Source: Octopus bimaculoides
Lineage: Eukaryota
Length of the DNA: 56,714 nt
Assembly: GCF_001194135.2 (NCBI RefSeq)
Contig: NC_068993.1
Location: forward strand, 9,314,284-9,370,997
Direction of reading: 5' to 3'
Shown: positions 5,535-54,328 of the stretch, in pieces
Layout: each line of letters starts with the position of its first letter
Numbering within the stretch: position 1 is the stretch's first letter
Translations under genes and position numbers: made by a program
The notes under the pieces: generated by a model
Databases searched by the model: none
Seen by the model: the letters and a program-made list of their open reading frames with translations, nothing else
What the model was told of the DNA's origin: nothing

Positions 5535-5559
5535 GTCTCATAGAACCGACTTTCTTCTC
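5535..5559 (-). CDS. Candidate 25-nt coding microexon (EKKVGSMR, phase 0 to 1) of an unidentified minus-strand gene
   Basis: ttcctgttgctttcag|GAGAAGAAAGTCGGTTCTATGAGAC|gtaaga; stop-free in the phase set by the upstream exons. Confidence 0.5.
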
Positions 5560-6167
5560 CTGAAAGCAACAGGAATATTTTTTCTTTCTCTTCTTCCGAA
5601 ATGTTACACACACACACACATATACCCCCCCCCCCATGGCACATATCACACACACACATGCACACACACGCATGCACGCACACATTTTTCGCTTCATGTT
5701 TTTCTCTCCATAAACATTTTTGAATACCAAGCTTCTAAGACAAAAAAAAAAAAAAGATAAATAAAAAATAAAATGTAATAAAAAAAAAAAACGTGTGCTT
5801 GATTAGAAATTAACCCATTAACCCCCAGAGATCCGATTACATTGGATTGATATGGCTTAATGGACCTATGCTATACACACACACACACACACGTGCGCTT
5901 GCGGTTGTAGGCAAGTGGCAGGAACAGGGAGAAGGCATTTATCTTCCGAGTGGCAGAATAATCTGGTGTAGAAAGCGAGATGAACTCAATGCCCTCTGTG
6001 TGGTCGCCTGCCGCAATTTTGGAGATCTTTTTCTCGTTATTTCATATTGTTATCGTTATTTATTATTATCGATATCTCATAGGTGCAGGCATGGTTGATT
6101 GGTTAAGAATTTCGATTTGCAATCATATTGGTTTCGGGTGGCAGCTTGGAGAAAAAACATCTACGTG

Positions 6168-6301
6168 CCCATGTGGTGAGAAGTTTGATTCCAAACTATA
6201 TGGTTCTGAGTTCTGTTCCACTGCATGGCACCTTGGGCAAGTGTCTTCTACAAAAGCCTTGTGAGTGGATTTGGTAGATGGAAACTAAAAGAAGCCTGTC
6301 G

Positions 6302-6340
<39 letters not shown>

Positions 6341-6420
6341 CTTTGTCTCTGTGTTTGTCCCCCTCCCACTGATTCACAACTGATATTTGTTTGTCTACAT
6401 CCCCCAAATTTGAGGCCTGT
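6168..6420 (+). mobile_element. SINE family B, diverged, preceded by a second head fragment (about 6080-6140)
   Basis: GCATGGCACCTTGGGCAAGTGTCTTC...GGATTTGGTAGATGGAAACT and an internal (TG)n. Confidence 0.7.
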
Positions 6421-6542
6421 TGCTTCCAGTAGAAAGAATTATTATTATCATTATTATTATTACTGATGTTGTTTTTGACATTGTTGTTAACTTTTACTGC
6501 TACCACAACTGCCAACGCCACCAGCACCACCAATCGCACGAG

Positions 6543-6574
<32 letters not shown>

Positions 6575-6596
6575 GTATTATTTCTGTTAGCCGAAA

Positions 6597-6750
6597 TCAA
6601 AGAATTTGTCTTCATTAGCTTCTAAGTTGGAAATGCAATTGGCAAAGAACTCATCTCGCCATGCCAGTTGCTAAAGCAAGCAATATTCTTAGAAGACTCT
6701 GGAAGTTCAAATGGTGTAAAGTAGCAAAACACCAGAACCAAAATCATTGA
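6597..6750 (+). mobile_element. Possible highly decayed RTE reverse-transcriptase fragment
   Basis: Frameshifted pieces KEFVFISF*VGNAIGKELI / VAKASNILRRLWKFKW / TRTKI resemble the RTE motif F.YLGS...EI..RIAKAS..F.RL...W...TKL. Confidence 0.3.
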
Positions 6751-6825
6751 AGAACACTCTGGAAAACCAATTTTAAAAATCAAAGCGAAGGAATTGTCGA
6801 TGATCTTTGAGAAGCTGATGATTAA

Positions 6826-7050
6826 CCCTTTTGATGCCATCCTACCTGAGACCGCCTGTGGTTCAAAGATACAAGTTCCCTGTTTTAAAGTGATCTAAAG
6901 TAAAAACCATCCATCAGAATTCCATGTTAATTCATATTCCAAACATTGGCTCAATAACAACCAAAAGTTATTTTAATAAATTCTTCGTTATACTTGAAAT
7001 TAATTGTAACAAAAGATGTGTGCTTCAATAGAAAGATGGCAACAAAACAG
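6826..7050 (+). mobile_element. piggyBac-like TTAA MITE, family I (diverged subfamily)
   Basis: TTAA-CCCTTTTG start; body homologous to 23003-23227, 35001-35221 and, inverted, 14084-14306. Confidence 0.6.
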
Positions 7051-50402: not shown

Positions 50403-50443
<41 letters not shown>

Positions 50444-50854
50444 GTATATATTTTAAAAAATAAAAAAAAAGACATAAGGACAAAAAAACCCAGCCACCAA
50501 ACTCTTTTGATGAAAGCTTCAAATTAAATGGTGCCACAAAGGCTGGCAGTATAGAAATGATGAAAATTAAGAAAAATAAGAAGAAAAAAAAACCTCTTCT
50601 TCTTTTATTGATTTTGTAAAAAAAAAAAAAAATCGTTAGAAATCAGAATGAATTGTATAGAGAATAAAAATAAAATAAAAACAAAATAATCTTTGAAAAC
50701 AGATCTCTTACATATACTCACACACACACACACATATAAGTATGTATGTATATATGTATGTGTGTATATATATGTATGCATGTATGTGTATACATACATA
50801 TATGCATGTGTGTGTCTGTATATAAATTTATATATGTACATGTGTGTGAGTGTG

Positions 50855-50885
<31 letters not shown>

Positions 50886-51516
50886 CCACACACATACAAG
50901 CAAAAGTTGGTGCACACAAATCTATTACGCAGACACAAGGAGAGCCTGGTGCACATGCGCACACAAGCATTCACACATAGAGATGCACACATAATGTAAA
51001 AGACACACACACACACACTTAAACATACAGACTACTGCCACATACTAACAAAAACAAACATTTAAACACACACATAAGAATGTGTATGCATGTGTGTGTG
51101 TGTGTGTGTGTAAAGTATAGAGAATGATGGTGATTAAATTGATGATCATGATGATGATGGTGGTGATGAAGATAGCGATGATGATGATGATGATAAACTA
51201 ACAAATTCTCTCACATATCTCATGATTTCCTTTCCCTCCATTGCTTTGAAATAATAAACGATAACTTTTCTTCTTTTTTTTTTTCTAAGTGCGTGTGTGT
51301 GTGTGTGTGAGGGGCGATGAAAGGAGAAGGTTAATTCTTTTGATATCAGACCATCTCAGATAAGCTCTGGTTTCTATGATATAATAAAATCACTCCTTGT
51401 TTTAAGGTATTTGCATTTTAAATTAAAAACCTTTTCATAATAATTTTATCTAAAACGGAAAAGAAAAAAAAAAGCCATAATAATAATAATAATAATAATA
51501 ACAATAATAATAATAA

Positions 51517-51731
51517 TCCTTTCTACTATAGGCACAAGGCCTGAAATTTGTGGGGAGGGGGATAGTTGATTACATCAACCCCAGTGTTTTACTGGTATTT
51601 AATTTATCAACCCTGGAAGGATGAAAGGCAAAGTTGACCTCAGCGGAATTTGAACTCAGTATATAGCAACAGGCGAAATACTTCTGAGCATGTCATCCAG
51701 TGCACTAACGATTCTGCTAGCTCGTTACCTT
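51517..51731 (-). mobile_element. Family F SINE with (AAT)n on both sides
   Basis: Reverse F head, core and tail; (AAT)n at 51478-51516 and about 51735-51760. Confidence 0.82.
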
Positions 51732-51862
51732 CCAATAATAATAATAACGATGATGATTATAATAAAGCAGGTTAAAACATTAACTTAATTTACCAATTAA
51801 TGTTGGTGCAGGTATGGGTGAGTGAAGGTCCCAGGTTCAATCATACTGTGTGACATGATTTT

Positions 51863-52215
51863 TAGGAGTGACTGCGTGGTGAGAGGCTTGCTTCCCAACC
51901 ACATGGTTCTGGGTCAGTCTCACTGCGTGGCACCTTAGGCAAGTGTCTTCTACTATAGCCTTCAGGCTAACCAAAGCCTTGTGAAAAAATTTCGTAGATA
52001 GAAACTGAAAGAAGCCCACTGTATATAAATATGTGTGCGTTGGTCTTTGTGTTTCCCTCAATGCTCCTTGACAACCAGTGTTGGTGTGTTTACACCCCCA
52101 GGGCCTAGTGGTTCAGCAAAAGAGACTGATAGAACAAGTACCAGGCTTTCAAAAGAAAAATATACTAGGGTTGATTCCTTTGACTAAAAATTCAAGGCAT
52201 GGCCAGTTCAAAAGA
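51863..52215 (+). mobile_element. SINE family B; further copies at 53879-54235 and a 3' half at 56177-56345
   Basis: Matches the B head, body and tail. Confidence 0.78.
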
Positions 52216-52761
52216 TAAAAAAAAAACCAAGCAAAAGATAAAAAAATAAAAGAAAAAAACTTAGGTCATCCCTGAAGTGTTAGGACTGAACTCATATCTC
52301 AAAGACAGGACCTTGTCACACACCATGTAAAGCTGATTCAGTGGCACCAATGACTGTGCAGTATTCAGCCACTTATGTAATTCTATAAGAAGTAGGGGAG
52401 TTTGTTGATTGAACAACTGGGTTACTTATCATTGGAACCAACCGAGGATCCATTCATACTAATTAATGAAACAGTTTAACTGAATTTTTGATTAATTTCC
52501 AAGAAATTCTTGATTAATTTTTAAATTAATTGAAATACATGGTGTATGCGGGGAAATTGGAATACAGTTACAGAATGGTTAAAATGTTTGCTCTGTGAGC
52601 TGACATAGGATGCAACAATAACATGACCATCATCACCATTATTATTGTTGTTGGTTTATGTCCACTTTCCTTGCTGGTATGGACAGGCCATGTCACCATG
52701 GTCTGAGGCAGCACAAAGGAGCTGCTTGGCTATTAGGGTCAGTGGAATACATCTGCTGGCT

Positions 52762-53059
52762 CAGGGGTTTTCAAACTGTAGTCCACGGACCACAGGGGGT
52801 CCGCAAAGACAAGACAGGGGGTCCATGGACAGCAAATACATTTTATGGGCAATTTGATTTTATATATGTTTTTTAATCAAAATTTTTTAATTGATAATAA
52901 ACCTATTTTGTTAAATACTGTTAAATAAATAAATGTAAAAATATATGTTACTTTAAGCAAATATTTATGTATAAATTTCATAAGCATTTATAAGGAGGTC
53001 CCTAAGGTAAAGCCTGAAATATAAAGGGGTCCGCAAGTCAAAAAATTTGAAAACCCCTG
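52762..53059 (+). mobile_element. hAT MITE (second subfamily) inserted in a minus-strand family A variant
   Basis: Perfect 14-bp TIR CAGGGGTTTTCAAA / TTTGAAAACCCCTG; 8-bp TSD TGCTGGCT / TGTTGGCT. Confidence 0.9.
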
Positions 53060-54312
53060 TGTTGGCTTAATTTCTATGCCTAAATGCCCTTCTGAATGCC
53101 AGCCACTTAAAAGTGTACTGGGTGCTTTTTATCATGGCACCCTCAGTAGGGAGATGTCATGCCCTCACCAAGAGTAAAGGGATTTTAAAATCTTACGCTT
53201 TATAGAGGGTCCTGGATGCACTTTTTTCTTGCACCAGAATTAAAGAGGTAACCATATTCATGACACAACTAAAGGGACCCCTTGAGCCCACATCTGTTCA
53301 TTCACTAGTCTCTTTACAGAGCAAAAGGCAGGGCAGACAGCAGAAACATGAATGAAAGTGATAAGAGGGATGAATGATAGGAGTACTCAGATCCATGGCA
53401 AGTGGGCAAGAAGGAGCAAGCATGTAATGGCAGGTAGAGTGAAGAAGAAGGAGAGAGGGAGAGCCAGGTGCGTGGGGTAATACGGTGGGGTGATGAGGGT
53501 CAGGGTAAAGTGTACTGACTGCAATCAGCCTGATGTAGTGAGGTTTCTTAAGGACAGAGGAGGGCAAATGGGGAGGATGATGGTAGAAAGGACAGGACAC
53601 AGATGAGTCGCATAGATAAGGGTGACAAAAAAAGGAAATGAGTGAAGGGGAACCTTTATGCACTGTTGATGTCAGATAAATCTACAAGAACAAATGAAGA
53701 TTTTAGCTGACATTGACTGAAATATTACAAACAAGATTTATCACTTAAGCACCATGAAACCCTCCAGGGAGCTTTTTAAGGGCCAGCTAAGAACTGTCCC
53801 TTACAAAGCTCTTTGCAGGATTTTGGATGAAAATTTATATACTTTTAAAATAAAAACGATAAAGAAAAGTGCCACGGTTAGGCACAGACATGGCTGTGTG
53901 GTTAAGAACCTCAAATTGTAGCTATGTGATTTCAGGTTCAGTTCCACTGCATGGCATCTTGGGAAAGTGTTTTCTATTACAGACCTGAGCCAACCAATGC
54001 CTTCTGAGTGAATCTGATAGACGGAGATTATGTGGAAGCCTGTTCTATGTGTGTATGTGTGTGTGTGGGGGGTGTTCACATTTATACCCCACCACTATGT
54101 GACAACCAGTGTTGGTTTGTTTACATTCCAGTAACATAACAGTTTAGCAAAAGAGAACAATAAAATAAGTGCTAGACTTAAAAGTATTGGGATTGATTTA
54201 TTCAACTAAGACCTTCAAGGTTTGAAACGCATAAAAGACACGCCACACTGATACCTACCACAATATACTATATCTCTGCCAAAAGTAAATAAAGCCATTT
54301 TAAACCACTTAC

Positions 54313-54328
54313 CTCGGGTCTTGGACAT
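54313..54328 (-). CDS. Candidate first coding exon segment (MSKTR, ends phase 1)
   Basis: AAAATA-ATG TCC AAG ACC CGA G|gtaagt; A-rich start context; in-frame TAA upstream at 54362-54364. Confidence 0.5.

What the first reader, a model, noticed from the sequence alone, without database searches (positions are those of the whole stretch)
5535..54328. Hidden minus-strand gene whose N-terminus is built from tiny exons across ~49 kb
Seen: six short segments with GT(A/G)AG donors, five of them with AG acceptors: 54313-54328, 34642-34677, 31606-31617, 20557-20588, 11930-11947 and 5535-5559. Their phases chain 1-1-1-0-0 with no stop, giving [46 protein letters not shown]. The 32-nt exon is open only in the phase delivered by the upstream exons. 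Three exons are symmetric, so they can be skipped. Known: clusters of frame-preserving microexons are typical of neural/muscle splicing (SRRM3/4-eMIC, Rbfox) and are missed by gene predictors. Inference: a combinatorially spliced N-terminus of a gene that continues beyond position 1. Chance splice-like sites cannot be excluded.
Basis: partly seen in the sequence, partly recalled or inferred. Interest (0 to 1): 0.7.

Follow-up and report, generated by a model that had tools for sequence, protein, structure and literature searches.

The report
Chance microexon chain, one real splice
The six tiny "exons" form a pattern that DNA of this size and composition yields by the hundred thousand, and no RNA joins them as claimed. 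The first segment's splice donor is nevertheless used by a rare minus-strand RNA that jumps 33.7 kb to a different acceptor, most likely an ordinary low-abundance non-coding transcript.

Summary
All six segments, their GT(A/G)AG and AG flanks, the phases and the 46-aa peptide are in the sequence exactly as written. They carry no statistical weight. Composition-matched random sequence gives the same.

No RNA read or contig covers segments 1, 2, 5 or 6 in the four to six RNA runs laid on each. The signal beside segment 4 comes from a (TA)n tract. Segment 2 is less conserved than its flanks, with both substitutions non-synonymous. The peptide has no relative among 5.8 billion proteins.

One thing is real. 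In one RNA run a 1005-nt contig joins GAG|GTAAGT at 54313|54312 to a pyrimidine-rich acceptor at 20649|20648. The join skips segments 2 and 3 and ignores segment 4's acceptor. Its frame from the ATG stops after 38 codons, and the exon diverges between species as fast as its flanks.

Verdict: the microexon N-terminus is a chance construct. A rare spliced minus-strand RNA, probably a lncRNA, does exist. Low interest.

The parts
54313..54683 (-). Real internal exon (371 nt) of a rare spliced RNA.
   Evidence: positions 602-979 of a 1005-nt contig of RNA run X50 (depth 8.3) match 54308-54685 with no mismatch, and both contig ends hang loose. The 3' boundary is fixed at 54313 by the GT-AG rule: the 5 nt GTAAG fit both sides of the junction. 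The 5' boundary at 54683 is inferred from cccag|TATC. The AG at 54685-54684 would then be shared with the end of the upstream exon.
54307..54315 (-). Donor site GAG|GTAAGT, with the exon ending at 54313.
   Evidence: Searches show the sequence. AG|GTAAGT occurs only once in the whole window on either strand, and this is it. The site is unchanged in the orthologous contigs of organisms B and D.
20649..54312 (-). Intron removed in the observed RNA. It is 33,664 nt as assembled and contains three assembly gaps, so its true length is uncertain.
   Evidence: define the junction. One search gives the gaps at 26974-27701, 35879-36086 and 44205-44247.
20043..20648 (-). Downstream exon. The start at 20648 behind ctgtttcttttttttttctcag is shown. 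The extent down to about 20043 is inferred.
Evidence: the last 30 loose letters of the X50 contig equal 20614-20643 exactly. One search gives the acceptor sequence, and scores it at 19 of 20 pyrimidines.
34642..34677 (-). Claimed microexon 2: chance splice-like segment with no support.
   Evidence: Depth is zero over 34588-34957 in X24, X41, X42 and X28 (the first reads, on a repeat, start in bin 34958-34994), and no contig of X44 or X49 lies on 34588-34994. The segment is skipped by the X50 junction. Substitutions at 34644 and 34674 in organisms B and D give R>T and P>Q.
31606..31617 (-). Claimed microexon 3: no direct test was possible.
   Evidence: At 12 nt the segment is too short to be laid on its own. 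It is skipped by the X50 junction, and there are no reads at its claimed partner, segment 2.
11930..11947 (-). Claimed microexon 5: no support.
   Evidence: No read or contig on 11738-11993 in X24, X41, X42 or X28. It was not tested in X50.
5535..5559 (-). Claimed microexon 6: no support.
   Evidence: No read or contig on 5360-5604 in X24, X41, X42 or X28. It was not tested in X50.

Best explanation
The six-microexon coding chain is a product of selection among very many chance splice-like motifs in 57 kb of AT-rich DNA. It is not a gene structure.

What is really there is a rare spliced RNA on the minus strand. An upstream exon lies outside the window or in a gap, and its last 26 nt are known. 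It is joined to a 371-nt exon (54683-54313). That exon's perfect-consensus donor GAG|GTAAGT is spliced across a 33.7-kb intron to a strong acceptor at 20648.

The known ~1 kb has no long ORF. From the ATG at 54328 the frame ends after 38 codons. The sequence evolves as fast as its flanks, contains or abuts repeat fragments, and was seen in one of six RNA runs. The most likely reading is therefore an ordinary low-abundance, tissue- or stage-restricted long non-coding RNA, or transcriptional noise spliced at strong sites.

Shown: the junction and its strand. Inferred: the exon extents, the non-coding status and the absence of other isoforms.
For: - Strict rules leave 145,334, 943,290 and 9.5e5.
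- No RNA at the claimed exons: depth is zero over 54186-54881, 34588-34957, 11738-11993 and 5360-5604. These used three raw RNA-seq runs of about 12 M sampled reads each, plus X28 contigs. X44, X49 and X47 contigs also gave nothing.
- The depth beside segment 4 covers only the (TA)n tract at 20590-20607. It is equal on both strands, has loose ends at 20590 and 20606/7, and shows joints to another microsatellite. Depth over 20452-20557 is zero.
- Real junction: an X50 contig joins 54313 to 20648 with GT-AG, the only AG|GTAAGT in the window, and an acceptor with 19 of 20 pyrimidines.
- Non-coding signs: the longest sense ORF in the reconstructed ~1 kb is 68 aa stop to stop, and the ATG frame gives 38 aa. 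The exon has 11 substitutions in 371 nt in both B and D, against 7-9 in 325 nt of flank.
- No protein relative was found for the peptide or for a junction-spanning ORF. The ten longest ORFs of normal composition have no Pfam hit above cut-off. There are no Rfam or tRNA hits.
- No public RNA run holds more than 7-13% of the sampled words of 27800-54249, which is the repeat level and is equal in other species.
- Thousands of low-abundance, tissue-specific lncRNAs carrying SINE fragments are reported for octopus (PMC9115989).
Against: - The real RNA rests on one contig of one run (X50), and only 30 of its 601 downstream letters were shown.
- X24, X41, X42 and X28 also lack the real exon. X44 and X49 were laid only on the segment 2 stretch and were never checked for it. 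The silence of these runs at segments 2, 5 and 6 therefore says little about isoforms of this RNA.
- The donor ACA|GTAAGT at 20557|20556 is one of only 11 GTAAGT sites on the minus strand. If it is used in some isoform, the frame from ATG 54328 stays open, so a coding 5' end is not excluded.
- At about 3% divergence the conservation test has little power for exons this short.
Confidence: 0.8

Rival explanations
1. The real RNA is the 5' end (5' UTR plus first coding exon) of an unannotated protein-coding gene that continues downstream beyond position 1. Some isoforms would use the donor at 20557|20556, so that [36 protein letters not shown]... is a true N-terminus. This differs from the reader's chain.
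For: The ATG at 54328 has an A at -3. The frame through the real junction is open up to the read-through of GTAAGTTAG. ACA|GTAAGT at 20556 is one of 11 GTAAGT sites on the minus strand. X50 was not examined downstream of 20614.
Against: The X50 contig's 601 downstream letters end where contiguous genomic sequence would meet a repeat at about 20043-20056. This argues for an unspliced exon running through 20556. An X28 contig and an X42 fragment lie in the would-be intron. The exon is not conserved above its flanks. A (TA)n-encoded IYIYI stretch is an unlikely protein segment. There are no reads at segments 5 and 6.
Confidence: 0.1
2. The reader's six-microexon chain is real but confined to a tissue, cell type or stage not sampled here, as with neural microexons.
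For: The segment 1 donor is used. Only a handful of runs were examined, each sampled at about 6%. Microexons are often missed by assemblers and aligners.
Against: Between 1e5 and 1e9 equivalent chains are expected by chance. The one observed junction from that donor skips segments 2 and 3 and uses another acceptor. Segment 4's acceptor is poor, with 9 of 20 pyrimidines. Segment 2 carries two non-synonymous changes in 36 nt. The peptide has no relative. Only 1 of 5 acceptors has a TGC within 30 nt upstream.
Confidence: 0.02
3. Nothing is transcribed here. On this reading the X50 join is an artefact, such as a chimeric contig, reverse-transcriptase template switching, or a genomic rearrangement in that animal.
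For: The join rests on a single contig of modest depth (8.3) in a run whose type is only guessed to be RNA. Five other RNA runs show nothing on the exon.
Against: The join falls exactly at GT...AG, using the best donor in the window and a 19-of-20 pyrimidine acceptor. Only 5 nt are shared across the junction, too few for a k=31 assembly chimera. Template switching would not select canonical splice signals. The genomes of organisms B and D are collinear with the window across 54186-54881.
Confidence: 0.07

Closest known systems
Neural microexon programme (SRRM3/SRRM4 eMIC-dependent exons of 3-27 nt; PMC8797185 for the bilaterian programme)
   Same: The segments are short and partly frame-preserving, with GT-AG flanks.
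   Different: Real microexons sit inside conserved protein-coding genes, are themselves conserved, and are seen in junction reads. Here there is no host coding gene, no junction, no conservation above the flanks and no protein relative. Two segments exceed 27 nt.
Low-abundance, tissue-restricted spliced lncRNAs of octopus that carry TE or SINE fragments (PMC9115989)
   Same: The RNA is spliced, uses canonical GT-AG and has no long ORF. It is rare (one of six runs), evolves at the neutral rate, and lies in SINE-dense sequence with repeat fragments at the end of the exon.
   Different: The full length, the ends, the tissue and polyadenylation are unknown. Only about 1 kb and one and a half junctions are documented.
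Pseudoexons and decoy splice sites in long introns and intergenic DNA (general knowledge of splice-site statistics)
   Same: Consensus-like donors and acceptors are far more numerous than real exons. Chains of them can always be put in frame.
   Different: Nothing differs. This is what five of the six segments are taken to be.

Membership tests
eMIC/SRRM4-type microexon cluster | Exon length of 3-27 nt | tested here: inconclusive
   The lengths are 16, 36, 12, 32, 18 and 25 nt. Four fit and two do not.
eMIC/SRRM4-type microexon cluster | Inclusion shown by exon-exon junctions in RNA | tested here: not met
   No reads or contigs lie on segments 1, 2, 5 or 6 in the four to six runs laid on each. 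The only junction found, 54313 to 20648, skips segments 2 and 3. X50 was not tested at segments 2, 5 and 6.
eMIC/SRRM4-type microexon cluster | UGC-containing motif close upstream of the 3' splice site (from published work on SRRM4, recalled from memory) | tested here: not met
   TGC occurs within 30 nt upstream of only 1 of 5 acceptors (segment 6, at -9). Segment 3 has one at about -31.
eMIC/SRRM4-type microexon cluster | Embedded in a conserved protein-coding gene, with the exon conserved above its intron flanks | tested here: not met
   Segment 2 has 2 substitutions in 36 nt, both non-synonymous, against 12 in 371 nt of flank. Segment 1 has 1-2 in 16 nt. The peptide has no relative, and no Pfam domain was found in the window's ORFs. 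The test has low power at about 3% divergence.
Spliced long non-coding RNA | Transcript longer than 200 nt with at least one canonical splice junction | tested here: met
   A 1005-nt contig carries a GT-AG junction between 54313 and 20648.
Spliced long non-coding RNA | No long or conserved ORF and no protein homology | tested here: met
   This holds for the known ~1 kb only. The longest sense ORF is 68 aa, and the ATG frame gives 38 aa. Searches gave no hits. Exon divergence equals flank divergence.
Spliced long non-coding RNA | Full-length transcript, with cap and poly(A) ends, lacking coding capacity | not testable with these tools
   The upstream exon lies outside the window or in a gap. 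The downstream end was not seen.

The most novel reading that the evidence does not exclude
The rare minus-strand RNA is the start of an unannotated protein-coding gene.
Probability: 0.03. Interest if true: 0.5.

Novelty: not a real feature. Interest (0 to 1): 0.1.

Why it matters
The main value is as a calibration case. In AT-rich, repeat-rich animal DNA, an in-frame chain of GTRAG/AG-flanked mini-segments is guaranteed by combinatorics. It should not be scored as evidence of a gene without junction reads.

There is a small positive result. A full-consensus donor that a reader can spot by eye (AG|GTAAGT, unique in 57 kb) did turn out to be used, which reveals a rare spliced transcript with a 33.7-kb intron. 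If that RNA proved to be the 5' end of a coding gene it would correct an annotation. As a lncRNA it is one of thousands.

Tried and rejected
Segment 3 was therefore never laid directly.
- To recover the X50 transcript by another route, an 87-aa junction-spanning antisense ORF was searched against the protein collection and found no candidate. Exact look-ups of two small ORFs inside the real exons were not on record.
- Rfam at gathering thresholds and ARAGORN found nothing in the window.
- A Pfam scan of the ten longest ORFs of normal composition gave only two sub-threshold chance matches, TMEM18 at 16.5 bits and tRNA-synt_1g at 16.6 bits.
- The 26-nt upstream-exon tail is not in the window with up to 3 mismatches.
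- None of the six segments overlaps a repeat seen within the window, so "exonised repeat" was rejected as an explanation for them.
- The apparent depth of about 100 next to segment 4 was considered as support and rejected. It is microsatellite cross-mapping on 20590-20607.
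Full report
**1. The observation**

Segment 1 is ATGTCCAAGACCCGAG followed by gtaagt. The other five segments are 36, 12, 32, 18 and 25 nt long, each preceded by ag and followed by gtgag or gtaag. Joined, they make 139 nt with phases 1-1-1-0-0 and no stop, and they translate to [46 protein letters not shown]. Three segments have a length divisible by three. 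The 32-nt segment is open in only one frame.

No segment touches an assembly gap. The window has twelve gaps. Nine of them fall inside 5535-54328, all in claimed introns, so the phases do not depend on gap lengths.

**2. Is it more than chance?**

It is not. The minus strand has 81 GTRAG sites, 162 AG|9-40 nt|GTRAG candidates and 65 ATG-to-GTRAG first-exon candidates. Counting ordered, phase-consistent, stop-free chains of one first exon and five internal exons gives these totals:

| Rules | Minus strand | Plus strand | Simulated mean (20 random sequences with the window's dinucleotide frequencies) |
|---|---|---|---|
| Strict | 145,334 | 943,290 | 9.5e5 |

The strict rules require exons of 12-36 nt, a YAG acceptor with at least 9 of 20 pyrimidines, and a first exon of at most 20 nt. 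Under them, 19,833 chains start at this very ATG. An in-frame chain is therefore guaranteed. The "only open in the delivered phase" argument is a one-in-three event picked out after the fact.

**3. RNA at the claimed exons**

DNA runs of one species (coded organism A) hold the window. Related species B to F hold about a quarter of its 31-mers. I used three raw RNA-seq runs of organism A (X24, X41, X42; about 12 M reads sampled from each) and contigs of further RNA runs.

| Segment | Stretch examined | Result |
|---|---|---|
| 1 | 54186-54881 | Zero depth in X24, X41, X42, X28 and X47 |
| 2 | 34588-34957 (raw runs), 34588-34994 (X44, X49) | Zero depth in X24, X41, X42, X28, X44 and X49 |
| 4 | 19074-20647 | Signal only on the adjacent (TA)n tract |
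| 5 | 11738-11993 | Nothing laid in X24, X41, X42 and X28 |
| 6 | 5360-5604 | Nothing laid in X24, X41, X42 and X28 |

Next to segment 4, the bin 20558-20610 shows a depth of about 100. The reads lie on 20590-20607, the (TA)n tract. They are equal on both strands, have loose ends on both sides, and show joints to another microsatellite at 19257-19276. The bins 20452-20557 are empty, so this is cross-mapping.

RNA depth elsewhere in these stretches sits on interspersed repeats, for example 52951-53080, 34995-35253 and 19074-19603. Those alignments are partial and the reads run on into unrelated sequence, so they come from copies elsewhere.

Across 27800-54249, no public RNA run holds more than 7-13% of the sampled words. 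The best such runs include other species. This is the repeat level, so no well-expressed gene lies there.

**4. Conservation**

Orthologous contigs of organisms B and D cover 34588-34994, with 14 and 12 substitutions respectively and one 1-nt deletion each.

- Segment 2 has two substitutions, at 34644 and 34674. That is 2 in 36 nt, against 12 in 371 nt in the flanks. In the claimed frame they change R to T and P to Q.
- Segment 1 has a synonymous change at 54323 in both B and D, and a T-to-S change at 54319 in B only.

The segments are thus no better conserved than the flanking DNA. At about 3% divergence the test is weak.

**5. The surprise: one real splice**

Laying RNA run X50 (organism A, 2023) on 54186-54881 gave a 1005-nt contig of depth 8.3. 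Its positions 602-979 match 54308-54685 without a mismatch. A further 601 letters hang loose below 54308 and 26 letters hang loose above 54685.

The last 30 loose letters below 54308 are identical to window 20614-20643 (no chance match in 100 shuffles). On the minus strand, the sequence there reads ctgtttcttttttttttctcag|GTAAGAAGTTCC.

The five letters GTAAG fit both the start of the intron at 54312-54308 and the start of the downstream exon at 20648-20644. That is why the match ran on to 54308. With the GT-AG rule the junction is GAG|gtaagt at 54313|54312, joined to cag|GTAAG at 20649|20648. It is also the only AG|GTAAGT on either strand of the window. The acceptor has 19 of 20 pyrimidines.

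A 5-nt overlap cannot cause a k=31 assembly chimera. The genomes of B and D are collinear with the window across 54308. I therefore take this as a true splice on the minus strand across a 33,664-nt intron as assembled, with three gaps inside it.

At the other end, cccag|TATC suggests that the exon starts at 54683. The 26-nt tail (GCGTGCAATGAAGTCGCAGGGTGGGG in RNA sense) would then belong to an upstream exon. It is not in the window, so that exon is either in the gap at 55558-55969 or beyond the window's end. This boundary is inferred.

**6. What the real RNA looks like**

If the 601 loose letters are contiguous genome, the contig starts at 20043. That is the edge of a high-copy repeat at 19818-20056, where a de Bruijn contig is expected to stop. 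A 193-nt X28 contig at 20241-20433 and one X42 fragment spanning 19604-20239 lie in the same stretch.

This extent is inferred, not shown.

In this reconstruction the frame from ATG 54328 reads [38 protein letters not shown] and then stops. The longest sense ORF is 68 aa stop to stop.

The 371-nt exon carries 11 substitutions in both B and D, about 3.0%. The 325 nt of flank carry 7-9, about 2.2-2.8%. There is no sign of constraint.

Protein and RNA-family searches gave nothing:
- Exact look-ups of two small ORFs were not on record.
- The ten longest ORFs of normal composition have no Pfam match above cut-off.
- Rfam and tRNA scans are empty.

**7. Interpretation**

The best-supported reading has two parts. 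First, the microexon chain is a chance construct. Second, there is a rare, spliced, probably non-coding minus-strand RNA. Octopus transcriptomes are reported to contain thousands of such RNAs, at low levels, tissue-restricted and with SINE fragments (PMC9115989).

The main caveat is this. The runs that are silent at segments 2, 5 and 6 either lack the real exon too (X24, X41, X42, X28) or were never checked for it (X44, X49).

So alternative isoforms cannot be excluded. In particular, use of the donor ACA|GTAAGT at 20557|20556 would keep the ATG frame open.

**8. Comparison with known systems**

The eMIC/SRRM4 microexon programme (PMC8797185) is defined by four features:
- Very short exons.
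- A location inside conserved coding genes.
- Junction-level inclusion in RNA.
- UGC motifs near the 3' splice site, the last recalled from memory.

Here two segments are too long, no junction exists, conservation is not above the flanks, and only one of five acceptors has a nearby TGC. The finding is therefore not a member of that programme. The real RNA meets the working criteria of a spliced lncRNA for the part that is known.

**9. Verdict**

The interpretation survives only as "a minus-strand spliced RNA uses the first donor". Novelty and interest are low. The useful lesson is methodological.

Noticed in passing
window 2573-2937, 16818-17110, 18312-18545, 19048-19421, 33769-34195, 47788-48115, 51886-52188, 56176-56347 and others: About 20 copies or fragments of an interspersed repeat of roughly 390 nt, probably a SINE, lie in both orientations at 75-94% identity. 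RNA-seq reads pile up on them in equal numbers from both strands. These are partial alignments that run on into unrelated sequence, so the reads come from copies elsewhere in the genome.
   Followed up: partly
window 34995-35253: This element appears only once within the window but is very abundant in RNA. X28 contig depth reaches about 45,000, and the raw runs give about 100 reads per strand. There are many variant letters and loose ends, so it is a highly expressed repeat family whose other copies lie outside the window.
   Followed up: no
window 804-852, 4588-5114, 26974-27701, 35879-36086 and other gaps: Most assembly gaps are flanked by (TA)n, (CA)n or (TATG)n-type microsatellites, seen as YIYIYI and CVCVCV in the ORF translations. 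The gaps probably stand for unresolved simple repeats rather than for missing unique sequence.
   Followed up: no
window 8001-10000 and 12001-14000: These stretches are strongly strand-asymmetric and of low complexity, with GC skew of +0.65 and -0.40. They are purine-rich or pyrimidine-rich runs that translate as poly-S/L/P or poly-V/G ORFs.
   Followed up: no
window 54328-54313 joined to 20648-20546 (minus strand): The real spliced RNA carries a 38-codon [41 protein letters not shown]. No evidence was obtained on whether it is translated.
   Followed up: partly
window 19604-20451: Sparse RNA of exact match lies below the real acceptor: a 193-nt X28 contig at 20241-20433 and one X42 read pair spanning 19604-20239. 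These runs show nothing on the upstream exon 54313-54683. This could be a separate transcript start, pre-mRNA, or traces of DNA.
   Followed up: no
beyond window 54685 (not in window): The 26 nt upstream of the real exon in the X50 contig read GCGTGCAATGAAGTCGCAGGGTGGGG in RNA sense. They are G+C-rich, unlike the window, and are absent from it. The upstream exon lies in the gap at 55558-55969 or past the window's end.
   Followed up: partly
window 34588-34994 and 54186-54881: Organisms B and D have collinear orthologous contigs with about 3% substitutions, most of them shared by both species. B and D are therefore closer to each other than either is to organism A.
   Followed up: no
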